Source of the DNA: Glycera tridactyla
Taxonomy: Eukaryota
Assembly (NCBI GenBank): GCA_965644265.1
Contig: OZ286477.1
Span: forward strand, 41,416,001-41,480,000
Reading direction: 5' to 3'
DNA: 64,000 bases
A program made the translations under genes and the position numbers. The first letter of the stretch is position 1; every line of letters starts with the position of its first letter. Below the pieces are notes generated by a model. The model had not been told where the DNA came from. It did no database searches and saw only the letters and a list, made by a program, of their open reading frames with translations. This document shows, one piece after another, positions 27,871 to 63,799 of this stretch.

Positions 27871-27879
27871 AGTATGCGC

Positions 27880-41193: not shown

Positions 41194-41360
41194 CATTCGA
41201 ACCTCCCTATAAAGACCGCCTTCGGTCGCACCGAAAAGTGGCCTTTATATGGAGGTGGTCTTTATAGATAGGTCATCTACTGTAGAAAATAATACCACAG
41301 TCGCAGTTCAGGGCGGTCTTTATAGGGAGGAGGGCTTTATAGAGAGGTGGTCTTTAGCAT
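41194..41360. mobile_element. pogo-like MITE, one end truncated
   Basis: TA followed by cattcgaacctccctataaagacc. Repeated internal ggtctttatag(a/g)gagg motifs are complementary to the left end. No complete right TIR. Confidence 0.65.
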
Positions 41361-42134
41361 TACCATTTAGTGTATTGTACCAGAATAAAAAGTCAAGTAA
41401 ATTTGATGGATGTTTCGCTGTGTTGCATCTCGCTTTTGTGGTTCCATTTATCGGGAGTTCTTATGTACATGTGGTATAATCATCCAACAGGACTGAAAAC
41501 TCAGAGGATGCGAGGATATGTCCCCATCCCAAGGTATAGTCCAAATCGAGTGTGTTTCTTTTCTGGGATTTCCTTCATGTATCCTCCATGAAAGTATGGA
41601 TATGTCCTGGTAATATGCGCACAGAGACTGAGTAGTTCATGTGGTAACATAAATTCTCAATTATATATTGTTCTTCTATGTTCTATGCTTTATGTTTTAT
41701 GTTCCTTATTTTGCGTATCTTATGTGGGAATCGTAATAATCATATATTTTCACACAACCAACTTCCTATCTCGATCTTGATTTGGCATTTGTTCCGATTG
41801 CTTAAAAAAAGTATTTGTACAAGTCAAATAGTGGGACAACTGGAGGGTGACAGGATGACAAAATTGACAAGCAGTGTTGTTTTTGTTATGGTGCAAACTT
41901 ATCTTATTTCCATTCTTCTTATAATGAGTTGTTCTACTTCAGTTATCTTCTGTCCTTGGTCATTTGGGGACAAATTACATGAGTGANNNNNNNNNNNNNN
42001 NNNNNNNNNNNNNNNNNNNNNNNNNNNNNNNNNNNNNNNNNNNNNNNNNNNNNNNNNNNNNNNNNNNNNNNNNNNNNNNNNNNNNNNNNNNNNNNNNNNN
42101 NNNNNNNNNNNNNNNNNNNNNNNNNNNNNNNNNN

Positions 42135-42232: not shown

Positions 42233-43647
42233 ATAACAGCAAGAATGACAACAACAACAACAGCAGCATCAACAACAATGACGCAAAAAGCAACGCAGTG
42301 TAATTGAAGGCACAAATAAAAATTTAGCCCTCGTTAGCAGGTGTACCACAGTACTTTCAATCCATCCTCCATACATGAAGATATGTCGTTCACACATGAC
42401 AGCTGAAGATTCTGGTTACCATGGAGTTTTCCTTGACGCAGTGTCATTGGTTGCCATGGTAACATTTGAAATTAGCCTAAAAATCAAAAGTTGCTACTCA
42501 GATGACATATAGGTACATAATTCATGACTAAAGGATGCCATCATATCGTATGACTTACAAGGATTTTTTTCGAGAGATGTTCATGTTCTTTGCTCCATGG
42601 TTGTTATGGTGAGCAAGGACGAATGACAAAAAATTGGTGGAAAATCACATTTCTCCAATTCGTACAGGCCATTCCTGCCCCTCCGCATAAGATTTTTATT
42701 ATTGCACAATCCACAAGGCTGTAATAGAAAACTTTAGGGCCCAGATTGTTGATGGGAAGTTTCTTTATCAGGCGAGCTGGAATAAGTCAAAATTAAGAAT
42801 TTTTGAAGGTTTCCATGAAAACTTTTCATGCATTGACACAGACCATTGTCCCATGTGTCGAGGCCCTATGTTTTCTGTGGAAAGTCACAACATAGCTTCA
42901 TGTTGGAGGTTATTCCTGAATTTCCTGATGAGTGGAAGGGTCTTTAGTTTTGGCATTAGATAGGGTAGGTCAAAGAATGTGGGGAATTACCTTTCATGCG
43001 ACCTAGACCTTGATTGAGAGCCATGGCAGTTACATACAAAAATATAAACTAGAAGTCCTGTGCTCGTTAAATGCAAAATATTGATAAAAATAGGTTGAAA
43101 TATAGATGTACCATGACCATATTACCAGGCCATTGTGAGCACAAAGGATTTGCCCTGATAAACTGGTGCATTGTCATTAGTGACACTGCGAACAGCAACA
43201 TTACCATTAGCTACAACGAGGGAAGGATGTTTAGCGGTGGCCTCTAGAGCACCCATGACATTCTGAGATGCTGACATAATTAAGCGACTTAGTATTATAT
43301 CCAACCATGCTCTGCAAAGATGTGAGTCAAATGACGACAGATATAGGTCAGTTGGATTTCCCTGGAGAATTTCCAGAGATGACGAGTTTCAGAGTTGTTG
43401 ATTGGTTGAATGGTTCTGAATTATTCTAACACCAGCAATGTACGCGCTAGATTGTGACGCCCGTGTAATGAATATTGATGGATTTATTCAGGACTTCTCT
43501 CGGGCCCTCAAAGGGAGATGATATTTCATCGAATCCATAGACTTTTGGGGTGGCAGATACGAGATAATTTGTGAAAGAGACATTTGGTCTCACCTTGAAA
43601 AAACAGATATTACCACGTGTTATCCTCAAACATCTTATACATCACAT

Positions 43648-44223
43648 CAACATGATACTATGAGATATTCTTTGATTGGTCCTCGAAGACCATCACTGCC
43701 AGGCATCATAACAACATGATACTATGAGATGTTCCTTGGTTAGTCCTCGAAGATCATCACTGCCAGGCATCATAACAACATGATACTATGAGATGTTCCT
43801 TGGTCAGTCCTCGAAGACCATCACTGCCAGGCATCATAACAACATGATACTATGAGATGTTCCTTGGTCAGTCCTCTAAGACCATCACTGCCAGGCATCA
43901 TAACAACATGATACTATGAGATGTTCCGTGGTCAGTCCTCGAAGACCATCACTGCCAGGCATCATAACAACATGATACTATGAGATGTTCCTTGGTCAGT
44001 CCTCGAAGACCATCACTGCCAGGCATCATAACAACATGATACTATGAGATATTCCTTGATCGGTCCTCGAAGACCATCACTGCCAAGCATCATAACAACA
44101 TGATATTATGAGATATTCCTTGGTCAGTCCTCGAAGACCATCACTGCCAGGCATCATAACACCATGATACTATGAGATGTCCCTTGGTCAGTCCTCGAAG
44201 ACCATCACTGCCAGGCATCATAA
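43648..44223. repeat. 64-bp minisatellite, 9 copies
   Basis: cctcgaag anchors at 43681, 43745, 43809, 43873, 43937, 44001, 44065, 44129 and 44193 (period 64). Confidence 0.97.
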
Positions 44224-47200
44224 GTTCATCTGGCATTTGTTTGCCACTGAAAAAGCTTCAAAATATGCATCTCGAAAGTTATCCACTGAGGATGAAATTC
44301 ACTGGAACTGGTGTTATGGTGTCAGGACCAACATGTGAATAATACTCGAATGGTTTAGTTACATATTGTGTAGATGAATATCTGAGGTCATCGCATGCAC
44401 ATCTAAGTTTGCAATCACTGGGAATATGAAAACTAACATAATTTGTAATTCTCCATATCCATGGATGAACAGGAAGCCCAGATCACTCATGGTGGTCATC
44501 AATGTTGATGATAGATCAATGGAACTTCATCTTATCCTTGCATGCTTTAGTTCACACAAGCACCATTGTAACAACGAATTTGAGCATATCTTGGTTATTG
44601 CTCAACCAATGCCTGCATGCTAAATTCGTCGGACATATGCCTCCATCGTAATCGTCAATAAGATAAAAAAAACGATCAACTATTCATCTCCTGTTTGAGG
44701 ATACAGTAATCACTGAACACGATGGTGAGTTTGCTGATATCAGAACAATACGTAGCTTCCATTGTACAGTGATGAGTTATGGTGCTCTGCATTTATGGAA
44801 GTTGATGATACAGTATTCATCACCTAGACAACCTAATCACTGTGTCCAGTTGCCCCGTCTCTTCATGGATATACATCCTGACGAAGAACATTAGTACAAG
44901 TACACTCAATTATGTGCATGAAGACAGCATTCACTTATTTAACGCATTGTCTTGTCGGAATATGCACAACATGAAGAAACTACTCAACCGCCTAACGAGC
45001 TCATTCAAAGTGTCACCACAGCAGTAAAATATACTCTCCGACAGGTGAGCTGAGAGATTTTGTTCCCTAATCATACACAGGATTGTTAATATCTGGTCCA
45101 ACTTCATTTTTGCTTAGTTGTGATGCCCGTGCGATTGGCATTGGTGCGATTATTTTAGGCTCATCCTTTCAGGTCCTTGACATCAGGAAAGCATTTCTGA
45201 AACTCGTGTACAGGGAATATGAGTATACTATGAGATATCTATTCTATATGATTCACGAATATCTCAAAAGCATTCAATGAACGGAAAGATGTGACATGGT
45301 GTCTGTGTTTGTGGGCAAGACAAACACTGGTTCAATTTAAATGTTTGCGCTCGGTCTAAGTGATGGATGATGGCAGGTTGGAGGTAATGATGGAGAAAAC
45401 ACATAGTGTGTAAAGTAAATGTCATATTGAAATGTGGAAACTCATCTCAACCAAATGAACTCAATTATCCCTTCATTTTGTGATAATGTTTGGCTGCAGG
45501 TTTATGAGCTGAGTCTAGATTACCCAATACTAAACATGAGAATGTTGCATACTGCTGAGTGTTGGATGTTTGGCTGGTGTTTGATTCACCCAACTGATCA
45601 GTAGTACCTGTAGGTTTTTGCCAGATCAAAGATGTATCTTGTCATTTCAGATATAAAGACATTGCAATCCCTGGAATCTTGCATAGCATCTTATTGATGC
45701 AGTTGCTATGGAAATTTTTCGGTCTATGTCACAATCTAATCAAACGTGAGCATCATTTGCCTGTCTCTTCAATCAGTGGGACCATCTGGGTCTGACAGGA
45801 TTAACTGTGGCATATACTAGGAATTGGACCATTGCACGACAACTCGGTGATTTTCCAGCAGTAATCAGGCGAACGTACGCAAGTTTTCTCATACTGTAGC
45901 CATCAGAGAAGATGTGATTGATGAAAGCATTGCTCATTGGCCTTGAATAGCTCATCAATCGAGAGGAGCAAATGAGGAATATAATGTGACTAGAGATGTT
46001 GCCTTCATCTTACAAGATGATGCTACGCACATCCTTTTTCTTCTTCTTCTTCTTCATCATCTTCTTCTTCTACTCCTCCTTCCCTTCCTACTCCTCCTAC
46101 TCCTCCTTCTTCATATCATCATCATGATCATCATCATTATCATCCTGATAACTGCCAACGCTATCATTGTCTCCATCGACATCAACTTCAGCAATGATGA
46201 CAACAACAAGAGCAAAAAGAGCAGCAGCAGCAACAACGAAAGCAATGGTAGTGACATCAACCACATCTACAACAGCTACCACAGCAACACTTATATATTC
46301 TATATATATATACCAAGTTTAAGGATGATTGGTTTTTGTTCAACATATGCACCAAACATGCCATATATCGACGCCGATGATATGGACATGGGTGGAATCA
46401 ATCCTCAACCCGGGTCTCTCAACAAAAAGGGAATATCTGTGAGATTGACAGCAAATACAGGATATCACACTGGGCTTGACTTGACCTTCAGAGTAATCAT
46501 ACCACCGTTTCTGTCCCATGCATAACACCCAAATGTGAGGAGTTCCATAATTTGCTTCCAATAATTATCGCTACAAGGCTTCCCATATTGGCTCACAAGG
46601 TGGACTCACATCTGTTTTCCCCGAAAGATTATCTCAAATTAATATATTTCACAGGAGTTATCCAGTGACTGTAGATTCAACTGAAAATGGATAGATTTCC
46701 GTGGTCACCAAGTGCAGGTAATGGTATGCATACCTCAAACAATCACTGAGTGACAGCAGTTATAATTTCACGTCATCCATGGATGAGTGGGAAATCTTGT
46801 ACACTGATGGTGGTCATCAATGTCGATGATAAATCAAAGCACCTACACCTCACCCTCACATGCTCTACTTCACACTCGCCCCATAATGCTCAACAATGTG
46901 AGCATAGCCTGGCCATCACTGAACTCTTGATCTCACACCATATTTGGCTTATCAAGTGAGATAATCATAAGAATCATCAGAATCATCCTTCAGTGGAGTC
47001 ACAGTAAAAAGACAAAAATTGGGAGATGCATGGAGTCAACAATTGAGAAAATAAAAATTTAGGGCGACAGATAGGATTGATGGATAAATGGATGGATGGA
47101 TGAATGGGAGGAGAAGTAGATGGATGGATTGATCGGTTGGTGGATGTATGGATGGATGATCGATGAATGGATACATCAGCGGATTGGGGATACACAGGTG

Positions 47201-47260
47201 GATGGATGGATGGATGGATGAATTGATAGGTGCATCGTTGGATGGATGGAAGGAAGGAAG

Positions 47261-47560
47261 CAGAGCCCCGTTGTCAGCTGAGCACACACTACATCTTAAT
47301 GGAGCCAGTGCTAATTTATCCAACCCATCAAGTAGTATTTCAAAATCAATAGCAGCAGTGTGGAATAATTGTTCTAAACGATCAGTAAACTGACTTCACA
47401 TGTACTACAATATTTCCCTATATTTTTGCTTATATTTTGTATGTGAGTATTTGTCATTTTGATAATGTATATATTTTTTTGTGTAATATGTTTTGGAATG
47501 GAAATGAGCTGTCACAGCTCATCTCCAGAAATAAACATTATGAAGCCTTATGAAGCCTTA
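47261..47560 (+). mobile_element. Probable 5'-truncated LINE 3' end
   Basis: Left-arm-specific. A frame ending ...AVWNNCSKRSVN* is followed by an AT-rich UTR, hairpin gagctg-tca-cagctc (47506-47520), AATAAA (47530) and a short tandem tail (atgaagcctt)x2. Confidence 0.55.
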
Positions 47561-47739
47561 TGGAGGATGGATGGATGTAACTGGTTCAGTGGATTATAAA
47601 CATGTCAGATGATTTTTCTTCGTACATCGTCTCGTCAGATGATTTCCACTGAATTATCCACTTGTCAGACATAGTTCTTCATTATGCAGCAAGAAGTCCC
47701 TCGGGCTGTATCACACTATCATCACTATCACAACCATAA

Positions 47740-48181
47740 TAAAACTCCAAATTCGGCGGGTACGTTTTAAACACCCCTGTCGTTATTTCTCGTCTGATTT
47801 CAGTTTTGTTTGCACGAATGTATTGAGGGGGTGTTCCGATGATTACCAATTTGGGTTTCAGGGACCCTGTATGCTTCTGAATAGGATTACGCCATCATTT
47901 CATTGTATGTATTCACCGAATGCCCGGGCATTATCGCCCAGTCTTCCCCATGTTTACAACGTAGATACGGCAGCCGCACCTGGTGCAAAACCAGCGTGAA
48001 ATCGTCATATTTTGCGCTCTAAGGTAAAATAAACAAGTGAACCTTGCCGTGATCACATTTCTGATCGTCGGAGATGTCACCAATGTATGTCTGCAAGTAT
48101 CATTTCAATCTGGAGCGAATTCGCGATGCTAGGGCGAAAAACGTACCCGCCACGACATAGCTTGACAAACTTTACCACCAA
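47740..48181. mobile_element. ~440-bp non-autonomous insertion with subterminal inverted repeats
   Basis: Present only in the IR2 left arm (the right arm reads caaccataac-tatcagcacc). Perfect 14-bp inverted pair ggcgggtacgtttt (47755-47768) / aaaacgtacccgcc (48138-48151). Confidence 0.75.
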
Positions 48182-50296
48182 TATCAGCACCTCAATCATC
48201 TCCACCTCAACACCATCATCATGACTACTACCCACACCACCAGAGTCTGACATTTCAACCACAGCCACTGCCACCGCCATGAGAAATGCCCTCATAAGGT
48301 CTGATGAAGTGTTTTTATTTATGCTGATTCCGTTTCAGTGGTATCAGGGGTAAACTGCTGTGCTTCACATGATAGCAACTCTTGGTACAGCACTTCTGGG
48401 ACCATCACAATTGCAGAAGGCAGCTGCTGGCTGATGAAGGTCGACAAGATGCATGGAGAATGGCCACATTGATGAGCAGCGCTGATTTCAAGGGAGTGCA
48501 AACCAATTTGTTTACATTCATTTCGTAATGAGTATTTTCACTTCAGTTATCTTCGCCCTCGATCATTTGTGAACGAAAGACATCAGTGGGAATGTCGTAG
48601 TTGTTTGGTCCGTCAGTGAAGTGTAAAAGCTTGTCCGGTATATGCTGATTGTCAGTTTATCTAGCACTCGACAGCCACCCGAGCGATTTCGATTCTACTC
48701 TCACTATAGGTTCCAAGTAAATGACACTCTCCGTCATTTCCGCCGGAAGTCACTGGTCTGAATACAGCAAGCCAGTCGCGCCCAGTCTCCAATCACCAAA
48801 TGTCAACTCAAACACTGCAGTGAGGAAAACCAGCTCTGACAATGTTCATATGACCTACACTCCTGATGACAGTGACAGATAAACAAGAGTTGTGGCCATG
48901 TACGTATCACAAGGGTCGAGGAAATGGGAATTGAATGCCTCGTGCTTATGTCAGTAATTATCACCTTGCGGCTAAACGATGGATAGTTGGTTATGATCAA
49001 TACCGCCGAACCATCATCCTGAAAATCACAGAAATCCTTCGACTATCAGTGTATGCAATAGTACAACGAATTTTGTCCTCCTCCTTTACTTGCACTTTGC
49101 GGTCTGTAAAACAAAATTGGGAAAATCTTGTTGAATTTGGTACAACTTATATGCTCATGAATCTCCTGCCTGGGTGAAATTTATCCCGACTCTGGAATAG
49201 ATGCTTTCTTAAGCAAGTAGTATAAAGATAAACATCCTGATCACACCGGTTATCAAGGTGGGGTAATTCCAGATGTCATTGTGAAAGAAATTCATTCCAT
49301 GAATCCATAGGACTGCAATCACGGAGTTCTGCGGTAGTTGCGCCACTCTACCAGACCTTCTGATGTTTGAAGCAATGACGATCCGCCACCATCTCTGGCC
49401 TCTTCCCTTCCACAGTGAATAGATCCACTCTCTCACAGCCATGTTTCATGGACCCGTCACCCAACACAAAACATGGAGCCATTGATGCTCGATCGTGGTG
49501 TCGCAATCAACGCCATGCATGGAAAGTGAGGACCAAACAAGCCGTATCCCACGTGGCCTCACCATTTTCCCTCAATTTGTTACATCAACAGGCGGCAGGA
49601 GTAGGTTGCGTATAGTATGCTGGAAGAATGCAAGATAATTGACAATGACGTAAATGTTTAGTGGATGAACAATGGCGAATGTCAGGTATTCATCAGCCGA
49701 ATCACTCCTCATTTCATCGTAGAATTGGATACTATCAACGGAAAATTAGAGGCAATAAGTCCTGGCTGTGTCAGGTGGGCTTCGAAGTCTGGGCAGGGGA
49801 CAGTTTCACAGAGGACTTGATGCAGATGACATGTATAAATTCTTTTGAAAATATGATGTGCATGATGACTATTTCTGATTTACTGACAATTCGAAGAAAC
49901 AGACGAGAATACAGCGACCAATAAAGCAGTCCAAGTATTGAAAGTTGTGCTGAAACTCTGCCAACTGATAGGACAAACAACTCCAACAGGTGATAGCAGA
50001 TCACCATGAATGATGCTCATCATCTGATTATACAGTAGCTAGAACCGATAGTAGTACAGTGAACGGAAGCATGGAGAATAAAGTCAACGGAAACATTGAC
50101 AGTACAGTCGACAAAGACACTGTCCATACATGTTCATTCATCAGAAGCATTGACAGTACAGTCATCTGAATCTGAAATAGCACAAACAGTCAATCAAGTG
50201 AATAATTGATCAAACACTCAACCGAACGATGACCGTACAGCCGAGAAAGGCATCGGAGAAGCATTCATCAGTAGCATGGACAGTACACTCAATAAA

Positions 50297-51030
50297 AGTC
50301 AACAAGCCTTGATAGAACAGTCGATAGAAGCACTGACCCTACAGTCAACAAGCATTGATAGAACAGTCAATAGAAGCACTGACCCTACAGTAAACAAGCA
50401 TTGGTAGAACAGTCAATAGAAGCACTGACCCTACAGTCAACAAGCATTGATAGAACAGTCAGTAGAAGCACTGACCCTACAGTCAACAAGCATTGATAGA
50501 ACAGTCGATAGAAGCACTGACCCTACAGTCAACAAGCATTGATTGAACAGTCAATAGAAGCACCGACCCTACAGTCAACAAGCATTGATAGAACAGTCAA
50601 TAGAAGCACTGACCCTATAGTCAACAAGCATTGATAGAACAGTCGACAGAAGCACTGACCCTACAGTCAACAAGCATTGATAGAACAGTCAATAGAAGCA
50701 CTGACCCTACAGTCAACAAGCATTGATAGAACTGTCAATAGAGGCATTGATCCTGCGGTGAACAGGAATTGCGAGAACAGAGAACAGACGCACTTATACT
50801 ACAGTCAACTAGCATTGCGAGAACAGACAACAGACGCACTGACACTACAGTCAACAAGCATTGTGAGAACAGTCAACAAGGTCACGGACACTACAGTCAA
50901 CAAGCATCGTGAGAACAGTCAACAGAGGCACTGACACTACAGTCAACAAGCATTATGGGAGCAGTCAACAGAAGCACTGACACTACAGTCAACAAGCATT
51001 GTGACAAAAGTCAACAGAAACATATACAGT
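50297..51030. repeat. 46-bp minisatellite, ~16 copies (mirror at ~56514-57247)
   Basis: Unit cagtcaacaagcattgatagaacagtcaatagaagcactgacccta. About 10 homogeneous copies are followed by ~6 diverged ones. Confidence 0.95.
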
Positions 51031-51085
51031 ACAGTCGGTGATAGCATTGACGATACAGTAATCCAAGGATTCATCGGTAATGCAT

Positions 51086-51089
<4 letters not shown>

Positions 51090-51139
<50 letters not shown>
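51090..51139. repeat. (AT)n microsatellite
   Basis: Perfect dinucleotide run. Its mirror position is the N gap 56340-56473. Confidence 0.97.
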
Positions 51140-51144
<5 letters not shown>

Positions 51145-52049
51145 TCAGAAGAGTCTGCGCTACACTATGGACTGGGCAGTATTCATATTTGTACCGACCT
51201 CAGGCAGCGAGAGAACAAAAAAGTAAACTTCTGCCACCCTCTAAATCAGCTGGAGATGTCAATCTGATGTATTTGTTCTCATTTTTTGCCAGCTAGGGAA
51301 TGCTCTCATTTTAAAGGTACATGCATTAGGTGAATATTGTTACATGATTAATCAGAAAAAATAATTTACAAACACTTATGGCAGACTTTGTTTTAGTTGG
51401 AAAAGAGAGGCGTGTGGTGGTAGAAATGAAGCCCTAATGAAAAAGAATATTATGATGTGTCAAGTGTAGTGTAAAGAAGATAATGATCCTTGCCTCACAT
51501 AGACTCAGCAAAATGCTTACATCATAGGATCAGTAACATCTGAGTGCCAGCGCAAATGATAAACGAATATTTCACACTTTCTCAACCATATCTAGATCAT
51601 TTGAAACCTGAAATTAGAAGCATCAGCATCGATGTTAGTGTATTCATGTCTAGAATATGGATATTTCAACTTTCCTTAGTGATACTCGCATGGATCAAAA
51701 TATACCCCGATCCCCTTTTCCCGCCTCCCCATTTCCNNNNNNNNNNNNNNNNNNNNNNNNNNNNNNNNNNNNNNNNNNNNNNNNNNNNNNNNNNNNNNNN
51801 NNNNNNNNNNNNNNNNNNNNNNNNNNNNNNNNNNNNNNNNNNNNNNNNNNNNNNNNNNNNNNNNNNNNNNNNNNNNNNNNTGCTGCTTCTTCTACTATTG
51901 CTACTACCATTACTACTTATTACTTATTACTTATTACTTACTACTACTAACAAATTCTGTCCGGGCTATACAATGCTGCTCATGGCTACCTACGGGAGTT
52001 TTGAGTCAGATGGCACCACCAGAGAATGGTCTGAATTAGGTGTCTGCAT

Positions 52050-52367
52050 GAATCGATCTATGGAGATCCCTAGTTCGAATTATGGAGACCCATGAATGGA
52101 TTTATGGAGAACCCTAATTTGAATCATGGAGGTCCATAAATCAAATTATGGATCTCCCTAAATTCGTTGGACTTGCAACATGACTGAATTATGGAGTTCC
52201 ATAATTCATTTATGGAACTCCCTAGATGATATATGGATATCGGCATATAGTTGTGATCTAGGGTATACCATAATGATTTAGGGATCTCCCTGATTAAATA
52301 TGGTTCTCCATGAATTGAATTAGGGAGAACCCTAAATGGTGAATAAAGTTCCCAATAGCGTTCCATA
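52050..52367. repeat. Degenerate ~22-bp satellite with palindromic core, probably part of an interspersed element
   Basis: Units such as atggagatccctagttcgaatt, atggagacccatgaatggattt, atggagaaccctaatttgaatc. It ends gcgttccata immediately before the beta copy starts. Confidence 0.7.
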
Positions 52368-52369
52368 GA

Positions 52370-55300
52370 GGAACGGATAGAGAAAGCTCTGTTTCATTGA
52401 GATATCACACACCCAGATGAAATGACCCTTGCTGTGAGGCTGCCAAGAACCAGCTGGATCCAGGCATTTTTGGACATCAGCCAGGGATAACTGAAAATAC
52501 TTAATGTGTCTGTCACACGACTTCCTTGGAAGGCAATATTTTTTTCATGTATTTCCTTCAGAAGCAGCATAGCAAACAAAGCCCTGTCTCTGCTACAGTG
52601 AACACACGTTTTAGGACAACCCTGACACACACACATTACACGTTCTCTGCCACCGGAAGTGGACCAGACACAAACTTTTAGCCACTAATCTCAACTGCAA
52701 AATTACTTCTCTTACACGGAAAGTGCTATATTGTACTGTGAATATCCGATTNNNNNNNNNNNNNNNNNNNNNNNNNNNNNNNNNNNNNNNNNNNNNNNNN
52801 NNNNNNNNNNNNNNNNNNNNNNNNNNNNNNNNNNNNNNNNNNNNNNNNNNNNNNNNNNNNNNNNNNNNNNNNNNNNNNNNNNNNNNNNNNNNNNNNNNNN
52901 NNNNNNNNNNNNNNNNNNNNNNNNNNNNNNNNNNNNNNNNNNNNNNNNNNNNNNNNNNNNNNNNNNNNNNNNNNNNNNNNNNNNNNNNNNNNNNNNNNNN
53001 NNNNNNNNNNNNNNNNNNNNNNNNNNNNNNNNNNNNNNNNNNNNNNNNNNNNNNNNNNNNNNNNNNNNNNNNNNNNNNNNNNNNNNNNNNNNGCTGTATT
53101 TTCTATGATGTTTCTTTTTTCGATATGAAAAACTTCTGCAAGAATTTCCTCTATGACAGAAGCTTCTCCGCTACAGACCAAAACAAAACATATTAACAAT
53201 ATATATGCGAAATATATACACACTATGTGCGTGTAGGAAGGGGCATATTTTTTGGAAGTGAAGGATGTGAATGGCTGAGATCTGAATGGGGTGGATAAGA
53301 GGAAGAAAAAAAGGGGTGGGGTAGGGGTGACTGGGACATTGAGTCTGACTTCTCGTACATACATTGGGCTCATCATAATGAGGTCAAAGTACTGTTGGTG
53401 ACAGAGGGGGGCAACACAGTAGTCAGGTCTGCCAGCATCCTTCTATGACAACCCTGTCAAACAATGTGGGAATGCCAAATTTCCCTATGGATCAATTAAT
53501 TTTTCGCTCTCTATCGGATCATCGAAGTTCATGTCTCATGCTTGACTTCGAACAAATCACTATGGGCGGGGAGGTTGATTGCAGCCTCCCAAAGTTTGAT
53601 GCGATGATATTGTCGGGATTTCCCGCCCCACCTCCAGATACTGCTGGCAAGTAGCCGTCATTGAGATATCTTGTGTGATAGTTCTTCATCAGGCCTTCAA
53701 TATCAAGATTGTTCATGATATGCAACCAAATGTTTGTTTTTGATTAATTCCACATTGCGAACTGCAACAGACCAGGTCCATCAATGCAGCCTCGCAGAGC
53801 TGGGTCACGGGTGATAGCGAAGCCATTTTTAAGATATTTGGAAGAGGCAATGCGTTTATGATGATGAACCACCACCAGAAAATGGCAAGATCCCTCCTTT
53901 CAGATAATTGTCACATCAGAGTGTAGATTACAGCAAAACTATCTTACAACCAGCTGATCATACCCTGAGTGAGGATTCTGCTCTCCTGTCTTTTTTAACC
54001 ATACCCTACCTCATGCATTGGTATTTGGTCACAGGGCAGTGTGTGACAGAGAATGCGATTTTGAGAGTTCCATGAATGTAGATCATTAGGAGTTCCGTTA
54101 ATGTGGGTCATTATGAAAATCTATGACAAGGGGAGTTCCGTCAATATAGGTCATTATGACAATTTATGACAAGGGGAGTTCAGTGAATATAGGTCGTTGT
54201 GGCATTTTATGACAAGGTGAGTTCAGTGAATATAGGTCATCATGACAATTTATGACAAGGGGAGTTCAGTGAATATAGGTCATTATGACAATTGATGACA
54301 AGGGGAGTTCAGTGAATATAGGTCATTGTGACATTCTATGACAAGGTGACTTCAGTGAATATAGGTCATCATGACAATTTATGACAAGGGGAGTTCCAAG
54401 AAAGTAGGTCATAAGGACAATTTATGACAAGGGGGATATAGTTCATCAAAGCAAGATATGGCGATGAGATTTCCATGGATGTTGGTAATTAGGACGATTG
54501 ATGACTAGATGAGTTCTGTTTATATAGGTCACTAGGGCAGATTATGACAAAGAGAGTTCCGTTGATGGAGAAGACAAAGACAGGGTTGAGGCGTTTTCGC
54601 GAACCAATTTTAAAAGACAGATATTCAGACTCATTACTATATTGACTTAATCCTACTCGGATGGACTCCATAATGGCCATTGTGGGCTTTGTTCATGGGT
54701 GAGAGAAGTCCCTGCATCAGTAAAACCATGACCACAGATTTATGCATGGTCACCATCAATCAGACAGTGTGAACGACATTCGATTGTATATGTGTGTGCA
54801 AGATATCAGCTACAATGAGATGCTATCCAACATATTTCTAATTGAATCGTATATGATCTCCGAGTTAAGCTTTCCATTTGTTTAGGGAGGATTACAGGTC
54901 ATTCAGCCCGATGAGAATTTGACAACGATCTGATTTCAATCCTGCTCTTCATTTGGACAACCATTATTATAGCAAGATTCCCCAAGCTCAATGGTACGAA
55001 CAGTTTTACCACACGCAGTGGAGCACAGGTGGAGCGATATCCCGAGGCACATTGCGCCATCTGTGCTCACAAGGGTGTGATATCATCATTCAAACCGCTC
55101 AGGGTGGGGACACTTGAAGTACCTTCTAAGTTCTGAATTAATTTCACTGTTGTTTTATTTGTAATCTTCTCTGCCCTACCTTGTGGAATAAGCAGGATCC
55201 GCCATGTTTGTTCTTCATGAATGCTCACTGGTACTCTATCTTACAGCACATGCTTCAAACATGAGCAGATGTTACAGTGCCAGTCAGGTGGTGAATGGCA

Positions 55301-55551
55301 CAACTAGTCCTTGCATTACTTACAGGGTGGGGAGTATTCCTAGTGATATGACATACCACTCTATCACAGAGAAAACTGCACAAGTGGCATTATGCGACTG
55401 AAACACTCTCTTGAAATGATCTTTTTTTTGTGATTTTCCATCTCGAGAAAGTGACGAGTTTTTGTCTCGCTTGTGGGCGAGCTTGAGATGACGGTAGAGA
55501 TGAATGGATGGATGGGTGGATGAATTAATGGATGTATTGATAGAAGGATGA
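52370..55551 (+). repeat. IR2 spacer portion of the beta copy, continuous with the right arm
   Basis: Colinear with 2021-5450. Its first 100 bp match the reverse complement of 413-510. Confidence 0.88.
54088..54435. repeat. 43-bp minisatellite, ~8 copies (homologue of 3755-4165)
   Basis: Unit gagttcagtgaatataggtcattatgacaatttatgacaaggg(g). Confidence 0.93.
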
Positions 55552-55765
55552 NNNNNNNNNNNNNNNNNNNNNNNNNNNNNNNNNNNNNNNNNNNNNNNNN
55601 NNNNNNNNNNNNNNNNNNNNNNNNNNNNNNNNNNNNNNNNNNNNNNNNNNNNNNNNNNNNNNNNNNNNNNNNNNNNNNNNNNNNNNNNNNNNNNNNNNNN
55701 NNNNNNNNNNNNNNNNNNNNNNNNNNNNNNNNNNNNNNNNNNNNNNNNNNNNNNNNNNNNNNNNN

Positions 55766-58700
55766 GGAAATGGGGAGGCGGGAAAAGGGGATCGGGGTAT
55801 ATTTTGATCCATGCGAGTATCACTAAGGAAAGTTGAAATATTCATATTCTAGACATGAATACACTAACATCGATGCTGATGCTTCTAATTTCAGGTTTCA
55901 AATGATCTAGATATGGTTGAGAAAGTGTGAAATATTCGTTTATCATTTGCGCTGGCACTCAGATGTTACTGATCCTATGATGTAAGCATTTTGCTGAGTC
56001 TATGTGAGGCAAGGATCATTATCTTCTTTACACTACACTTGACACATCATAATATTCTTTTTCATTAGGGCTTCATTTCTACCACCACACGCCTCTCTTT
56101 TCCAACTAAAACAAAGTCTGCCATAAGTGTTTGTAAATTATTTTTTCTGATTAATCATGTAACAATATTCACCTAATGCATGTACCTTTAAAATGAGAGC
56201 ATTCCCTAGCTGGCGAAAAATGAGAACAAATACATCAGATTGACATCTCCAGCTGATTTAGAGGGTGGCAGAAGTTTACTTTTTTGTTCTCTCGCTGCCT
56301 GAGGTCGGTACAAATATGAATACTGCCCAGTCCATAGTGNNNNNNNNNNNNNNNNNNNNNNNNNNNNNNNNNNNNNNNNNNNNNNNNNNNNNNNNNNNNN
56401 NNNNNNNNNNNNNNNNNNNNNNNNNNNNNNNNNNNNNNNNNNNNNNNNNNNNNNNNNNNNNNNNNNNNNNNNNATCCTTGGATTACTGTATCGTCAATGC
56501 TATCACCGACTGTACTGTATATGTTTCTGTTGACTTTTGTCACAATGCTTGTTGACTGTAGTGTCAGTGCTTCTGTTGACTGCTCCCATAATGCTTGTTG
56601 ACTGTAGTGTCAGTGCCTCTGTTGACTGTTCTCACGATGCTTGTTGACTGTAGTGTCCGTGACCTTGTTGACTGTTCTCACAATGCTTGTTGACTGTAGT
56701 GTCAGTGCGTCTGTTGTCTGTTCTCGCAATGCTAGTTGACTGTAGTATAAGTGCGTCTGTTCTCTGTTCTCGCAATTCCTGTTCACCGCAGGATCAATGC
56801 CTCTATTGACAGTTCTATCAATGCTTGTTGACTGTAGGGTCAGTGCTTCTATTGACTGTTCTATCAATGCTTGTTGACTGTAGGGTCAGTGCTTCTGTCG
56901 ACTGTTCTATCAATGCTTGTTGACTATAGGGTCAGTGCTTCTATTGACTGTTCTATCAATGCTTGTTGACTGTAGGGTCGGTGCTTCTATTGACTGTTCA
57001 ATCAATGCTTCTTGACTGTAGGGTCAGTGCTTCTATCGACTGTTCTATCAATGCTTGTTGACTGTAGGGTCAGTGCTTCTACTGACTGTTCTATCAATGC
57101 TTGTTGACTGTAGGGTCAGTGCTTCTATTGACTGTTCTACCAATGCTTGTTTACTGTAGGGTCAGTGCTTCTATTGACTGTTCTATCAATGCTTGTTGAC
57201 TGTAGGGTCAGTGCTTCTATCGACTGTTCTATCAAGGCTTGTTGACTTTTATTGAGTGTACTGTCCATGCTACTGATGAATGCTTCTCCGATGCCTTTCT
57301 CGGCTGTACGGTCATCGTTCGGTTGAGTGTTTGATCAATTATTCACTTGATTGACTGTTTGTGCTATTTCAGATTCAGATGACTGTACTGTCAATGCTTC
57401 TGATGAATGAACATGTATGGACAGTGTCTTTGTCGACTGTACTGTCAATGTTTCCGTTGACTTTATTCTCCATGCTTCCGTTCACTGTACTACTATCGGT
57501 TCTAGCTACTGTATAATCAGATGATGAGCATCATTCATGGTGATCTGCTATCACCTGTTGGAGTTGTTTGTCCTATCAGTTGGCAGAGTTTCAGCACAAC
57601 TTTCAATACTTGGACTGCTTTATTGGTCGCTGTATTCTCGTCTGTTTCTTCGAATTGTCAGTAAATCAGAAATAGTCATCATGCACATCATATTTTCAAA
57701 AGAATTTATACATGTCATCTGCATCAAGTCCTCTGTGAAACTGTCCCCTGCCCAGACTTCGAAGCCCACCTGACACAGCCAGGACTTATTGCCTCTAATT
57801 TTCCGTTGATAGTATCCAATTCTACGATGAAATGAGGAGTGATTCGGCTGATGAATACCTGACATTCGCCATTGTTCATCCACTAAACATTTACGTCATT
57901 GTCAATTATCTTGCATTCTTCCAGCATACTATACGCAACCTACTCCTGCCGCCTGTTGATGTAACAAATTGAGGGAAAATGGTGAGGCCACGTGGGATAC
58001 GGCTTGTTTGGTCCTCACTTTCCATGCATGGCGTTGATTGCGACACCACGATCGAGCATCAATGGCTCCATGTTTTGTGTTGGGTGACGGGTCCATGAAA
58101 CATGGCTGTGAGAGAGTGGATCTATTCACTGTGGAAGGGAAGAGGCCAGAGATGGTGGCGGATCGTCATTGCTTCAAACATCAGAAGGTCTGGTAGAGTG
58201 GCGCAACTACCGCAGAACTCCGTGATTGCAGTCCTATGGATTCATGGAATGAATTTCTTTCACAATGACATCTGGAATTACCCCACCTTGATAACCGGTG
58301 AGATCAGGATGTTCTGTTCATACTCCTTGCTTCAGGAAGCATCTGATCCAGAGTCGGGATTCATTTCTCCCAAGCAGGAGATTCATGAGCATCTGAGTGG
58401 TATCAAATTCAACTAGTTTTTCCCAATTTTGTCTTACCGACCACATAGAGCAAAAGGTGCAGGACCGAATTCGTTGTACTACTGCATACACTGATAGTCG
58501 AGGTGATAAAGACTGACATAAGCACGAGGTAAGGTCAGAGCATTCATTTCCCATTTCTTCAACCCTTGTGATACGTACCTGTGTTGTTCATCTGTCACTG
58601 TTATCAGGAGTGCAGGTCATATGAACATTGTCAGAGTTGACATTTGGTGATTGGTGGCTGGGCGCGACTGGCTTGCTGTATTCAGACCAGTGACTTCCGC

Positions 58701-61700
58701 CGGAGATGACGGAGAGTGTCATTCAATTGGAACCTATAGTGAGGGTAGAATCAAAATCACTTGGGTGGCTGTCGGGTGCTAGATAAACTAGCAATCAGCA
58801 TATACCGGGAAAGCTTTTACACTTCACCGACGGACCAAACAACCACGGGATTCCCACTGATGTCTTTCGTTCACAAATGATCGAGGGCGAAGATAACTGA
58901 TGTGAAAATACTCATTACCAAATGAATGAAAACAAATTGGTTTGCACTCTCTTGAAATCAGCGCTGCTCATCAATGTGGCCATTTTCCATGCATTTTGTC
59001 GACCTTCATCAGCTAGCAGCTGCCTTCTGCAATTGTGATGGTCCCAGAAGTGCTGTACCAAGAGTTGCTATCGTGTGAAGCACTGCAGTTTACCCCTGAT
59101 ACCACTGAAATGGGATATGCATGAACAAAAATACTCCATCAGACCTTACTCCATTTTGCCATCTCTATTGCGGGCTTTTGAACAGGGCCATGGCAAAAAT
59201 GACAACATCGACAACCAAGATGATGGTGATGGTTGTGGTGATGGCAGTGGGGATGAGGGCATTGTTCATTGTGGTGGCAGTGGTTGTGGTTGAAATGTGA
59301 GGCTCTGGTGGTATGGGTAGTAGTTATGATGATTGTGTTGAGGTGAAGATGGTTGAGGTGCTGATAGTTATGGTTGTGATAGTGATGATAGTGTGTGATA
59401 CAGCCCGAGGGACTTCTTGCTGCATAATGAAGAACAATGTCCGACAAGTGGATAATTCGACGATGCACCACGAAACATCGTCTGACAAGTTTATAATCCA
59501 CTGAACCAGTTACATCCATCCATCCTTCCTTATATCCATAAAAACGATGCACCTATCAATTCATCCATCCATCCATCCATCTGTGTATCCCCAATCCATT
59601 GATGTATCCATTCATCGAACATCCATCCGTACATCCATCAATCGATCAATCCATCCATCTACTTCTCCTTCCATTCATCCATTCATCCATCCATCCATGT
59701 ATCCATCAATCCTATCTGTCGTCCTGAATGTTCATTCACTCAATCATTGACTCCATGCATCTCCCAATTTTTGTATTTCAACTGTGACTCTGCTGAAGAA
59801 TGATTCTGATGATCCTTATGGCTATCTCACTTGATAAGCCAAATGTGGTGTGAGATCAAGAGTTCAGTGATAGCCAGGCTATGCTCACATTGTTCACATT
59901 GTTGAGCATTATGGTGCGAGTGTGAAGTAGAGCATGTGAGGATAAGATGTAGGTGCTTTGATTTATTATCGACATTGATGACCACCATCAGTGTACCAGA
60001 CTTCCCACTCATCCATGGATGACGTGAAATTATAACTGCTGTCACTCAGTGATTGTTTGAGGTATGCATACCATTACCTGCACTTGGTGACCACGGAAAT
60101 CTATCCATTTTCAGTTGAATCTACAGTCACTGGATAACTCCTGTGAAATATATTTATTTGAGATAATCTTTCGGGGAAAACAGATGTGAGTCCACCTTGT
60201 GAGCCAATATGGGAAGCCCTGTAGCGATAATTATCGGAGGCAAATTCTGGAACTCCTCACATTTGGGTGTTATGCATGGGACAGAAACGGTGGTATGATT
60301 ACTCTGAAGGTCAAGTCAAGCCCAGTGTGCTATCCTGTATTTACTGTCAATCTCACAGATATTCCCTTTTTGTTGAGAGACCCGGGTTGAGGATTGATTA
60401 CACCCATGTCCATATCATCGGCGTCGATATATGGCATGTTTGGTGCACATGTTGAACAAAAACCAATCATCCTTAAACTTGGTATATATATATAATATAT
60501 AAGTGTTGCTGTGGTAGCTGTTGTAGATGTGGTTGATGTCACTACCATTGCTTTCGTTGTTGCTGCTGCTGCTCTTTTTGCTCTTGTTGTTGTCATCATT
60601 GCTGAAGTTGATGTCGATGGAGACAATGATAGCGTTGGCAATTATCAGGATGATAATGATGATGATGATATGAAGAAGGAGGAGTAGGAGGAGTAGGAAG
60701 GGAAGGAGGAGGAGTAGAAGAAGAAGATGATGAAGAAGAAGAAGAAGAAGAAGAAGAAGAAGAAGAAGAAAAAGGATGTGCGCAGCATCATCTTGTAAGA
60801 TGAAGGCAACATCTCTAGTCACATTATATTCCTCATTTGCTCCTCTCGATTGATGAGCTATTCAAGGCCAATGAGCAATGCTTTCATCAATCACATCTTC
60901 TCTGATGGCTACAGTATGAGAAAACTTGCGTACGTTCGCTTGATTACTGCTGGAAAATCACCGAGTTGTCGTGCAATGGTCCAATTCCTAGTATATGCCA
61001 CAGTTAATCCTGTCAGACCCAGATGGTCCCACTGATTGAAGAGACAGGCAAATGATGCTCACGTTTGATTAGATTGTGACATAGACCGAAAAATGTCCAT
61101 AGCAACAGCATCAATAAGATGCTATGCAAGATTCCAGGGATTGCGATGTCTTTATATCTGAAATGACAAGATAAATCTTTGATCTGGCAAGAACCTACAG
61201 GTACTACTGATCAGTTGGGTGAATCAAACACCAGCCAAACATCCAACACTTAGCAGTATGCAACATTTTCATGTTTAGTATTGGGTAATCCAGACTCAGC
61301 TCATAAACCTGCAGCCAAACATTATCACAAAATGAAGGGATGATTGAGTTTATTTGGTTGAGATGAGTTTCCACATTTCAATCTGACATTTACTTTCCAC
61401 ACCATGTGTTTTCTCCATCATTACCTCCAACCCCCCATCATCCATCACTTAGACCGAGCACAAACATTTAAATTGAACCAGTGTTTGTCTTGCCCACAAA
61501 CACAGACAACATCTCACATCTTTCAGTTAATTGAATGCTTTCGAGATATTCGTGAATCCCAATGGATAGATATCTCATAGTATGCTTCTATTCCTTGAAC
61601 ACGAATTTCAGAAATGCTTTTCCGATGTCAAGGACCTGAAAGGATGAGCCTCAAATAATCGCACCCATGCCAATCGCACGGGCATCACAACCAAGCAAAA

Positions 61701-63407
61701 ATGAAGTTGGACCAGAATCAAACAATCCTGTATATGATTAGTGAACAAAATCTCTCAGCTCACATGTCGGAGTGTGTATTTTACTGCTGGGGTGACACTT
61801 TGAATGAGCTCGGCAGTTGAGTAGTTTCTTCATGTTTTGCATATTCCGAGAAGACAATGCGTTAAATAAGTGAATGCTGTCTTCATGCACATAATTGAGT
61901 GTAATTTTACTAATGCTCGTCGCCAGGCTGTTTATCCATGAAGAGACGGGGCAACTGGATAGCGTGATTAGGTTGTCTGGGTGATGACTACTGTATTATC
62001 AACTTTCATAAATGCACAGCACCATAACTCATCACTGTACAATGGAAGCTACGTATTGTTCTGATATCAGCAAACTCGCCATCATGTTCAGTGATTCATG
62101 TATCCTCAAACTGGAAATGAACATTTGTTCGTTTTTTTAGCTCAATTGACGATCACGATGGAGGGATATGTCCGACGAATTTAGCATGCAGGCATTGGTT
62201 GAGCAATAGCCAAGGTATGCTCACATTCGTTATTACAGGGGTGCTTGTGTGAACTGAAGCATGCAAGGATAAAATGAAGTTCCATTGATCTATCATCAAC
62301 ATTGATGACCACCGTGATTGATCTGGACTTCCTATTCATCCAGGATATGGAAGAATTACAAATTGTGTTAGTTTTCATATTCCCAGTGATTACAAACTGA
62401 GATGTGCGTGCGATTACCTCATATATTCATCCACACAATATGAAACTAGACCATTTGAGTATTATTCACATTTTGGTCTTGACACCATAACACCACTTCC
62501 AGTGAATTTCATCTTCAGTTGGCCTGCCGTGGTGGCTCAGTGGTAGCATACCGGGCCGGCGTGCAATGGGTCTGGGGTTCAGTGCTCGGTCCTATCATGC
62601 AGGAACATTTCACCCTTCATCTTCGATCCTCCTCGGCAGGTGGTCTGATTTAGCCTACTCAAGTGCAGGAAGTGGACCTAAAGCCTTAACATTTCATCCT
62701 CAGTGGATAACTCTCGAAATGAATATTTTGAAGTTTTGTTGTGGCAAACAAATGCCAGATGAACTTATGATGCCTGTCAGTGATGGTTTTCGAGGACTGA
62801 CCAAGGAACAATTCTGAAACTCGTTATCTTTGAAAATCCACAATGGAAACCCAACTGACCTATATCTGTCGTCATTTGACTTACATCTTTGCAAAGCATT
62901 GTTGGATACACATGCACAGTCACTGAATTATGTCAGCATCTCAGAATGTCATGGGTGCTCTAGGGGCCACCGCTTTACATCCTTCCCTCGTTGTAGCTAA
63001 TGGTAATGTTGCTGTTCGCGACATCATTAATGACACTGCTCCAGTTCATCAAGGCAGATCCTTTGTGCTCACAATGGCCTGGTGATATGGTCGTGGTACA
63101 TCTTTATTTCAACCTATTGTTTCAATCTTTTGCATTTTATTAGCATAGTTTATATTTTGCATGTAACTGCCATGGCTCTCCCTGGCAATCAAGGTCAAGA
63201 TGGCATGAAAGTCAATTCCCCTCATTTTTTGACCTACCCTATCTAATGCCAAAACTACAGACCGTTTCCCTCATCAGGAAATTCAGGAATAACCTCCAAC
63301 ATGAAGCTATGTTGTGACCTTCCACAAAAATCACAGGGCCTGGACACATGGGACGATGGTCTGTGTCAATGCATGAAAAGTTTTCATGGAAACTTTCAAA
63401 AATACTT
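55766..63407 (-). repeat. Inverted repeat IR2, right arm (~7.6 kb)
   Basis: Mirror of 42795-51736 with arm-specific indels. Homology fades at ttcaaaaatactt (~63407). Confidence 0.96.
62520..62690 (+). mobile_element. tRNA-derived SINE with ~14-bp target-site duplication
   Basis: A box tggctcagtgg (62533-62543) and degenerate B box ggttcagtgc (62576). Flanked by atttcatcttcagt (62506-62519) and atttcatcctcagt (62691-62704). The mirror arm has a single empty site at ~44245-44260. Confidence 0.85.
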
Positions 63408-63799
63408 GATATGTTTTGGTGAGAACTTACCATTTAGACCCACATCTCATATTCTAAGACAGCAGACAGTATATACGAGAATAATGACAGCAGTGATGGC
63501 GATTGTCAAGCGTACGCTCCCTTCAGCGATAAATAAATGGCAAAATGGTGTATTTGCATTGATATACCATAGCTCACATACTAAGACAGCAGACAGTATC
63601 TTCATTATCGCATATACAATAATTATGACGCACACTCACTTCAGCGAAAAAAAAGTGGCATAACATTGACATTTCCATACAGTCAGTAATCTAAAGCTAC
63701 TCTCCTGAGATTTGAGGGAAATTTCATACAATCTTGAGATGCATAGGTTCAAAAGTACCAAGATATTTGATGCAGTATTGAAGGTAAATAATCAATATA

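What the first reader, a model, noticed from the sequence alone, without database searches (positions are those of the whole stretch)
42795..63407. 20.6-kb quasi-palindrome (IR2): old arms with a sharply bounded, recently homogenised core
49244-51736 vs 55766-58300 differ at only a few sites (for example 51661/55841, 51290/56216, 50533/57012). Immediately beyond 49243/58301 identity drops to roughly 85-90%. 45750-46950 vs 59830-61090 is again ~98%, and 42.8-45.7 kb ~90%. Arm-specific TE insertions occur only in the diverged blocks. Inference: an old inverted pair with discrete conversion tracts, the latest running from 58300 to the simple repeat at 55766.
Basis: partly seen in the sequence, partly recalled or inferred. 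Interest (0 to 1): 0.72.

Follow-up and report, generated by a model that had tools for sequence, protein, structure and literature searches.

The report
Non-coding palindrome with homogenised inner core
A 20.6-kb inverted duplication of non-coding animal DNA has arms about 10% diverged, apart from two sharply bounded stretches that one arm has copied from the other; this is a clean but ordinary example of gene conversion in a palindrome.

Summary
The left arm (42792-51736) and right arm (55766-63410) are inverted copies around a 4.0-kb spacer. A penalised-likelihood segmentation gives four blocks:
- A, 42792-45299: distance 0.106.
- B, 45300-46793: distance 0.021.
- C, 46794-49243: distance 0.101.
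- D (core), 49244-51736 vs 55766-58300: 3 differences in 2401 sites, distance 0.0013.

A and C are equally diverged (p=0.72). Two older paralogues in the window serve as outgroups, at 1990-8138 and 37211-41985. They are 20-29% from both arms in all four blocks, so B and D are not slow-evolving or constrained. Differences in C split evenly between the arms (17 vs 19). The first paralogue runs without a break from spacer through core to outer arm, so the core is not a separate insertion.

All indels of 60 nt or more lie in A and C. They include a tRNA-derived SINE with a 13-nt target duplication and a MITE-like insert.

I found no coding or RNA signal. The neighbouring gap-free palindrome IR1 also has a 99.9% block next to its spacer.

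Best reading: an old inverted duplication with discrete arm-to-arm conversion tracts. An assembly artefact in the core cannot be excluded without reads, because both arms end at gaps at the same homologous base. The kind is known, so interest is modest.

The parts
42792..51736 (+). Left arm of IR2 (8945 nt). It is probably the derived, inverted copy.
   Evidence: Self-BLAST and MAFFT arm alignment. The outer edge is sharp at about 42790/63412. The paralogue at 1990-8138 is colinear with the spacer plus the right arm, not with the left arm.
55766..63410 (-). Right arm of IR2 (7645 nt, including a 134-N gap). It is contiguous with the spacer in the ancestral order.
51737..55765 (.). Spacer (4029 nt, of which 699 are N in three gaps). 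It contains 22/44-bp and 43-bp tandem arrays. The stretch 52464-55550 has a paralogue at 2014-5322.
   Evidence: No Pfam hit for its ORFs.
49244..51736 (+). Block D, the left copy of the homogenised core. The right copy is 55766-58300.
   Evidence: 3 mismatches in 2401 sites, JC distance 0.0013. Outgroup distance is 0.20-0.29.
55766..58300 (-). Block D, the right copy of the core. It is split by the gap at 56340-56473.
46794..49243 (+). Block C, diverged (right copy 58301-60001).
   Evidence: 142 mismatches in 1498 sites, JC 0.101. Left arm matches the outgroup at 17 sites, right arm at 19.
45300..46793 (+). Block B, the older homogenised tract (right copy 60002-61508).
   Evidence: 31 mismatches in 1483 sites, JC 0.021. 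Outgroup distance is 0.27, as elsewhere. Only microsatellite-length indels of 24 and 9 nt.
42792..45299 (+). Block A, diverged (right copy 61509-63410).
   Evidence: 158 mismatches in 1596 sites, JC 0.106.
50297..51019 (+). 46-bp minisatellite, 15.7 units, inside the core. The mirror copy at 56525-57247 has the same unit number and variant order, with 1 mismatch.
62520..62690 (+). Right-arm-only tRNA-derived SINE (171 nt), flanked by a 13-nt target-site duplication with 1 mismatch.
   Evidence: Its head also occurs at 39208-39273.
47740..48173 (+). Left-arm-only 434-nt insert with 14-nt subterminal inverted repeats (MITE-like).
47259..47563 (+). Left-arm-only 305-nt insert inside a GGAT/GGAA microsatellite. 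Its nature is unknown.
43407..44177 (+). Left-arm-only stretch of about 770 nt, mostly a 64-bp minisatellite of 9 units where the right arm has one unit.
59149..59252 (-). 104 nt present in the right arm and in the paralogue (6951-7019) but missing from the left arm, so a deletion in the left arm.
1990..8138 (+). Older direct paralogue ('copy 3') of spacer + right arm (matches 52464-61097, about 71-86% identity). Used as an outgroup.
37211..41985 (+). Older direct partial paralogue ('copy 4') of the left arm (matches 44732-48588, about 70-79% identity). Used as an outgroup.

Best explanation
IR2 is a real inverted segmental duplication of non-coding, repeat-rich DNA in a non-mammalian animal genome.

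Proposed history:
1. An ancestral unit (today's spacer plus right arm) had about 7.6 kb copied in inverted orientation about 4 kb away.
2. The two arms then diverged to about 10%. They picked up a SINE, a MITE-like insert, minisatellite expansions and deletions.
3. Non-reciprocal homologous recombination between the arms (gene conversion: a break in one arm repaired by copying from the other) overwrote two stretches. The older one is 1.5 kb (block B, now 2% diverged). The more recent or still active one is at least 2.5 kb next to the spacer (block D, 0.13% diverged).

Shown: the four-block pattern, the equal age of A and C, the lack of constraint in B and D, and the continuity of core and outer arm in a paralogue.

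Inferred from established knowledge of homology-dependent recombination:
- The copying mechanism itself.
- That the sharp edges persist because recombination needs long perfect matches, so a homogenised island keeps converting while 90%-identical flanks are refractory.
- That proximity to the spacer favours pairing. The neighbouring palindrome IR1 shows the same placement.
For: - Four-segment model: distances 0.106 / 0.021 / 0.101 / 0.0013. A vs C is not different (p=0.72); B vs flanks 4e-32; core vs flanks 6e-73.
- Outgroup distance is 0.20-0.29 in the core and 0.22-0.28 in A, B and C.
- Differences in C are symmetric: 17 vs 19.
- Copy 3 is colinear from the spacer through the core into block C.
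- The outer edges of the core (49244 and 58300) lie inside uninterrupted sequence, not at gaps.
- Three differences separate the two core copies, two of them in the 574-nt piece between gaps.
- No indel of 60 nt or more lies in B or D, against six in A and C.
- IR1 has no N anywhere in it, yet it carries a near-identical inner block of 3.0 kb (3 mismatches in 24163-27162) next to its spacer, plus a second identical patch.
- The tract sizes (1.5 kb and at least 2.5 kb) fit the multi-kilobase tracts reported for a human Y palindrome: mean minimum 2068 bp, maximum over 9 kb (PMC3723533).
Against: - Both arms stop at gaps at the same homologous base (51736/55766), and the right core copy is split by another gap. 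This is also what a repeat collapsed and placed twice, or a consensus shared between copies, could look like.
- A 46-bp minisatellite identical in unit number and order in both arms is equally expected from an artefact.
- No reads, no second assembly and no orthologue were available, so conversion is inferred from the pattern and not observed.
- Conversion between arms already about 10% diverged is expected to be rare, unless the core was homogenised continuously.
Confidence: 0.72

Rival explanations
1. Assembly artefact confined to the core. The outer arms are a real, old inverted pair. The inner 2.5 kb is either one sequence placed on both sides of the spacer, or two copies whose reads were pooled, so that their consensus looks more alike than the true copies are.
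For: Gaps sit at the inner ends of both arms at exactly homologous positions, and another gap splits the right copy opposite a dinucleotide run in the left arm. The gap lengths are odd, estimated numbers, typical of a scaffolded draft. The minisatellite is identical in both arms.
Against: The switch from about 85% to about 100% identity lies inside continuous sequence in both arms. Three differences exist, two of them in the isolated 574-nt piece. The order and orientation of the right-hand pieces match an independent paralogue. The same assembly resolves a 3.0-kb, 99.9% inverted pair in IR1 without any gap. Pooling reads could lift 99% to 99.9%, but not 90% to 99.9% with an edge this sharp.
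Confidence: 0.17
2. The core and block B are alike because they are functionally constrained or mutate slowly, not because they were homogenised.
For: A 140-nt patch in block B is better conserved in the old paralogue (about 89%) than its surroundings (about 72%).
Against: Outgroup distances in the core (0.20-0.29) and in block B (0.27) equal those in A and C. No Pfam hit for 15 ORFs within IR2. Codon positions differ equally in the best-conserved patch, 17/16/18. No Rfam hit and no folding signal. A minisatellite and a dinucleotide run lie within the identical stretch.
Confidence: 0.02
3. The 'palindrome' is a transposon with very long terminal inverted repeats (foldback-like), or two copies of an element inserted head to head. 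In that case the core (with the spacer) would be a younger element lodged in the centre of an older one.
For: The arms carry internal tandem arrays (64-bp and 46-bp), as foldback elements do. Several older copies of the unit lie in the same window.
Against: No target-site duplication at the outer ends. No transposase or other protein signal. The older copy runs straight across the arm/spacer junction and across the core/outer-arm region, so neither the arm nor the core behaves as a unit with its own ends. Tandem arrays make up only a small part of the arms.
Confidence: 0.03
4. The diverged blocks are the altered ones. On this view a young, once-uniform palindrome had blocks A and C of one arm overwritten by conversion from diverged paralogues elsewhere in the genome.
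For: Diverged paralogues of the unit do exist nearby.
Against: In block C, derived states are shared evenly by the two arms (17 vs 19) and in block A 5 vs 6, whereas one-sided overwriting predicts a strong skew. A and C have the same distance. Independent transposon insertions and deletions occur in both arms within A and C. The in-window paralogues are far too diverged (over 20%) to be the donors.
Confidence: 0.03

Closest known systems
Large sex-chromosome palindromes of primates and mouse, kept alike by arm-to-arm gene conversion (Rozen et al. 2003, cited from knowledge; PMC3723533; PMC8327919; bioRxiv 10.1101/800185)
   Same: Two inverted arms around a unique spacer. Identity is kept up by non-reciprocal exchange between the arms. 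Tracts are multi-kilobase (mean minimum about 2 kb). The centre is the most dynamic part.
   Different: Those palindromes have arms of 8 kb to over 1 Mb at 99% identity or more along their whole length, and they carry testis-expressed gene families. Here only 2.5 kb of about 8 kb reaches that level, the rest is 90-98%, and no gene is detectable. The chromosome and the organism are unknown.
Palindromic segmental duplication SD12A1 on mouse chromosome 12 (PMC13688818)
   Same: An autosomal-type, largely non-coding inverted duplication with about 93% cross-arm identity and a few blocks of much higher identity (97-98.6%).
   Different: It is megabase-scale. Its authors read the high-identity blocks as later local duplications and found no evidence of conversion. 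Here the high-identity blocks are colinear and flush with the old arms, which fits copying between the arms.
Conserved long inverted repeats in Caenorhabditis (PMC1803023)
   Same: Invertebrate inverted repeats of about 2 kb at 99.7% identity, maintained over long times, with gene conversion proposed.
   Different: Those flank paralogous gene pairs and have short spacers (126 bp). Here there are no genes and the spacer is 4 kb.
Quasipalindrome correction by template switching (bacteria and yeast; from knowledge)
   Same: An imperfect inverted repeat is made perfect by copying one arm from the other, starting near the centre.
   Different: That process is known for repeats of tens of bases. A kilobase-scale equivalent here is only an analogy.

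Membership tests
Gene-converting large palindrome (sex-chromosome type) | Two arms in inverted orientation flanking a non-duplicated spacer | tested here: met
   Arms 42792-51736 and 55766-63410; 4.0-kb spacer with no arm-to-arm match.
Gene-converting large palindrome (sex-chromosome type) | Arms of at least 8 kb with at least 99% identity along the arm (the criterion used in PMC8327919) | tested here: not met
   Identity over the aligned columns is about 95% (334 mismatches in 6978 sites). Only 49244-51736 (2.5 kb) exceeds 99%.
Gene-converting large palindrome (sex-chromosome type) | Arms more alike than their age allows (concerted evolution shown against an outgroup) | tested here: met
   For blocks B and D, arm distance is 0.021 and 0.0013, against 0.10 in A and C, with equal outgroup distance. 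The outgroups are paralogues, not orthologues.
Gene-converting large palindrome (sex-chromosome type) | Arms carry duplicated protein-coding genes | tested here: not met
   No Pfam hit for 15 ORFs within IR2. The longest stop-free stretch outside low-complexity runs is 138 codons. No codon-position bias. Short spliced exons could be missed.
Gene-converting large palindrome (sex-chromosome type) | Location on a sex chromosome, and spacer inversion polymorphism | not testable with these tools
   No chromosome, organism or population data. The spacer orientation matches the paralogue's order.
Foldback / long-TIR transposon | Target-site duplication at the outer ends | tested here: not met
   The flanks at 42790 and 63412 share no direct repeat. 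About 10% divergence could have eroded a short one.
Foldback / long-TIR transposon | Copies share the same termini; arms built mainly of tandem subrepeats | tested here: not met
   Older copies cross the arm/spacer junction. Tandem arrays are a minor part of the arms.
False duplication / collapsed repeat in an assembly | The identical stretch is bounded by gaps or contig ends on all sides and is 100% identical | tested here: inconclusive
   The inner ends are at gaps (51737, 55765). The outer ends are inside continuous sequence. There are 3 differences.
False duplication / collapsed repeat in an assembly | Read depth and spanning reads are inconsistent with two copies | not testable with these tools
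   No reads. No second assembly was found.

The most novel reading that the evidence does not exclude
Two neighbouring non-coding palindromes (IR1 and IR2), set among older inverted and direct copies of the same units, each keep a near-perfect block exactly at the spacer edge while the rest decays. This could mean one of two things. It could be a centre-anchored homogenising process, such as breaks at a hairpin or at spacer-edge simple repeats, repaired from the other arm. Or it could be selection for a perfect double-stranded core, as in a hairpin-RNA / small-RNA-producing locus. It would then be more than the chance placement of ordinary conversion tracts.
Probability: 0.1. Interest if true: 0.6.

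Novelty: new member of a known kind. Interest (0 to 1): 0.3.

Why it matters
Most knowledge of palindrome dynamics comes from gene-bearing sex-chromosome palindromes that are near-identical along their whole arms. That uniformity hides individual conversion tracts.

This locus is a decayed, gene-free palindrome. About 10% background divergence makes the tract edges visible to within 13 nt, and in-window paralogues allow a test against constraint. It therefore shows arm-to-arm copying working without any obvious selective reason.

Together with IR1, it also hints that the spacer-proximal part is favoured. It does not open a new question on its own. Its value is as a clean example, and as a candidate locus for measuring tract length and spacer flipping if population data exist.

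Tried and rejected
- Rfam on the whole window (gathering threshold) and on block B (E<=1): nothing credible.
- ARAGORN: no tRNA. The SINE was recognised only by eye, from its tRNA-like head and its target duplication.
- Pfam on 19 ORFs, 15 of them within IR2: only the RNase H of a DIRS-like retroelement in IR1's spacer, and that below the curated cut-off.
- Bacterial promoter/terminator scan: not informative for this genome.
- Homologue search with the retroelement ORF: best hits 43-44% identity, to unnamed proteins; the named hits (starfish, mollusc, reptile) are 31-49%. This gives 'non-mammalian animal' but no species. I do not take the window for human: it holds a DIRS-like element and its CpG observed/expected is about 0.5. 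That DIRS elements are absent from mammals is from knowledge.
- Coding test on the best-conserved patch: no codon-position bias.
- RNA folding of that patch: z-scores near 0.
- Target-site duplication at the palindrome's outer ends: none.
- GC content by block: no rise in the converted blocks. There are too few sites to test GC-biased conversion.
- A 25-mer from the core against metagenome contigs: 0 hits (the first try failed on a busy machine).
- Exact-protein look-ups for two window ORFs: not on record.
- A first segmentation with a heavy penalty merged A-B-C. It was redone with BIC-like penalties.
- No gap was filled. For the gap at 56340-56473 I only compared lengths and flank colinearity.
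Full report
**Setting.** The window is 41% G+C with CpG observed/expected of about 0.5. It has nine N runs of odd lengths, no tRNA or Rfam hit and almost no long ORFs. The only protein signal is a retroelement RNase H/RT fragment at 28630-29475(-). Its best relatives are 43-44% identical and unnamed; the named hits are starfish, mollusc and reptile sequences at 31-49%, some with the methyltransferase domain typical of DIRS-like elements. I take the window for a non-mammalian animal genome and not for human. The species could not be named.

**Observation.** A minus-strand self-comparison shows two large inverted pairs:
- IR1: 19834-27379 vs 29882-37077.
- IR2, the finding: 42792-51736 vs 55766-63410.

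A global alignment of the IR2 arms gives the following:
- 3 mismatches in 2401 aligned sites for 49244-51736 vs 58300-55766.
- One isolated mismatch at 49243/58301.
- Then 20 mismatches within the next 130 nt outward.

A penalised-likelihood segmentation gives four blocks:

| Block | Left-arm coordinates | JC distance |
|---|---|---|
| A | 42792-45299 | 0.106 |
| B | 45300-46793 | 0.021 |
| C | 46794-49243 | 0.101 |
| D (core) | 49244-51736 | 0.0013 |

A and C do not differ (p=0.72). B differs from its flanks (4e-32) and from D (1e-10). D at the outer rate has probability 6e-73.

**Gaps (tested first, as asked).**
- *56340-56473.* The flanks of this gap are colinear with the left arm, with 134 N opposite 92 nt. 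Order and orientation hold; only the estimated length differs.
- *52752-53092.* The flanks of this spacer gap are colinear with a paralogue, which has its own N run at the homologous place.
- *51737-51880 and 55552-55765.* These begin at exactly homologous bases of the two arms (51736/55766). Beyond them lie unrelated simple repeats, so the true inner ends of the arms are hidden.
- Most gaps in the window abut simple repeats. I filled nothing.

**What the arms are.** No ORF within IR2 hits Pfam (15 tried). Stop-free stretches are short or of low complexity.

Two older copies of the unit lie in the window:
- Copy 3 (1990-8138) is direct with, and colinear across, spacer 52464-55550, the core and the outer right arm to 61097, at about 71-86% identity.
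- Copy 4 (37211-41985) is direct with left arm 44732-48588, at about 70-79% identity.

Three things follow from this. Spacer plus right arm is the ancestral order and the left arm is the derived inverted copy. The core is not a separate element lodged in an older palindrome. The scaffold order of the pieces right of the spacer is independently supported.

**Tests between explanations.**
- *Constraint.* With copy 3 as outgroup, the core is 20-29% from the outgroup, the same as block C at about 22%. With copy 4, blocks A, B and C are all 22-28% away. Blocks B and D therefore evolve as fast as the rest, and selection or a low mutation rate cannot explain their identity. The best-conserved 140-nt patch shows no codon-position bias (17/16/18), no Rfam hit and no fold signal.
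- *One-sided overwriting.* In block C the sites where the arms differ split 17 (left = outgroup) to 19 (right = outgroup). In block A they split 5 to 6. Both arms diverged on their own, which argues against one arm having been overwritten by a foreign copy.
- *Transposon ends.* The outer ends have no target-site duplication.

**Arm-specific events.** All of them lie in A or C:
- A right-arm tRNA-derived SINE (62520-62690) with a 13-nt target duplication. Its head recurs at 39208-39273.
- A left-arm 434-nt insert (47740-48173) with 14-nt subterminal inverted repeats.
- A left-arm 305-nt insert (47259-47563) inside a microsatellite.
- A left-arm 64-bp minisatellite expansion (9 units against 1).
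- A 73-nt left-only piece (48966-49038).
- A 104-nt piece (59149-59252) that the paralogue also has, so a deletion in the left arm.

Block B has only 24- and 9-nt microsatellite-length differences, and block D has none.

**Mechanism.**
- *Shown:* the mosaic pattern, the equal age of A and C, the lack of constraint, and the continuity with a paralogue.
- *Inferred:* the arms arose by one inverted duplication (distance about 0.10). Later, non-reciprocal recombination copied 1.5 kb (B) and then at least 2.5 kb next to the spacer (D) from one arm to the other. These tract sizes fit those inferred for a human Y palindrome (PMC3723533).
- *From general knowledge of homology-dependent recombination:* a homogenised island stays recombination-competent while 90%-identical flanks do not. 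That would keep the edges sharp. It would also let D be maintained continuously, as opposed to being made by a single event.

IR1 shows the same layout. It has 3 mismatches in 24163-27162 next to its spacer, a second identical patch (21181-21930) and 94.6-98% identity elsewhere. Two cases are too few to prove a preference for the centre. Rearrangements around the centre are known for primate X palindromes (PMC8327919).

**Artefact question.**
- *For an artefact:* gaps at both inner ends, a gap in the right core, and an identical minisatellite in both arms.
- *Against it:* both outer edges of the core lie in continuous sequence; three differences exist, two of them in the isolated 574-nt piece; and IR1, with an equally similar 3-kb inner block, is assembled without any gap (there is no N between 10771 and 39599).

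I put the artefact at about 0.17. Only reads can settle it. No independent copy of the locus was found.

**Comparison and verdict.** The locus works like the gene-converting palindromes of mammalian sex chromosomes. It fails two of their defining features, whole-arm identity of at least 99% and gene content. It is closest in kind to decayed, non-coding inverted segmental duplications with high-identity blocks (PMC13688818) and to maintained inverted repeats in nematodes (PMC1803023). It is a new member of a known kind: real, cleanly analysable and of modest interest.

Noticed in passing
window 19834-27379 and 29882-37077 (IR1), spacer 27380-29881: A second, gap-free palindrome with the same mosaic. 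There are 3 mismatches in 24163-27162 next to the spacer, 1 in 750 at 21181-21930, and 94.6-98% identity elsewhere. One arm has a 308+62-nt indel at 23377-23763. Its 2.5-kb spacer is largely a DIRS-like RT/RNase H fragment (ORF 28630-29475, minus strand).
   Followed up: partly
window 16708-19391: A second, diverged DIRS-like copy (62-74% identity), inverted relative to the one in IR1's spacer. It lies just outside IR1's left arm (matches 28240-29623 and 27541-27870).
   Followed up: no
window 1-511 and 1603-2302: Reciprocal-looking junctions. Read on the minus strand, 1-511 gives IR2-spacer 52366-52468 followed by IR1-arm 30312-30712. The stretch 1603-2302 gives IR1-arm 29971-30318 followed by IR2-spacer 52464-52751. 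The two reference sequences look as if they exchanged partners at one point each. An N run (543-1220) lies between, so piece orientation is uncertain. Unexplained.
   Followed up: no
window 2344-2626 and 52752-53092: N runs sit at homologous positions of two paralogous copies that are only about 71-86% alike. This suggests the same hard-to-assemble (or deliberately masked) sequence in both. The letters were not looked up.
   Followed up: partly
window 8002-8138, 45711-45851, 60957-61097 (also about 39400-39560): A 140-nt patch is about 89% conserved between old paralogues whose neighbourhood is about 72% alike. In copy 3 it is flanked by microsatellites. It is not coding by the codon-position test, has no Rfam hit and no fold signal. 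Possibly a small mobile element or a conserved non-coding element.
   Followed up: partly
window 1990-8138 vs 37211-41985: The two old copies of the IR2 unit are themselves in inverted orientation and bracket IR1. The region therefore looks like nested rounds of inverted and direct duplication of the same units.
   Followed up: no
window 54089-54434 and 3683-4300: A 43-bp (129-bp higher-order) tandem array in the IR2 spacer is shared with the paralogue copy 3, so it is older than the palindrome. The 46-bp array of the core (56525-57247) and its surroundings (56035-57333) are absent from copy 3.
   Followed up: no
window 62520-62690 and 39208-39273: A tRNA-derived SINE family that ARAGORN and Rfam do not report. 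One full copy has a 13-nt target duplication, and one head fragment is 92% identical.
   Followed up: partly
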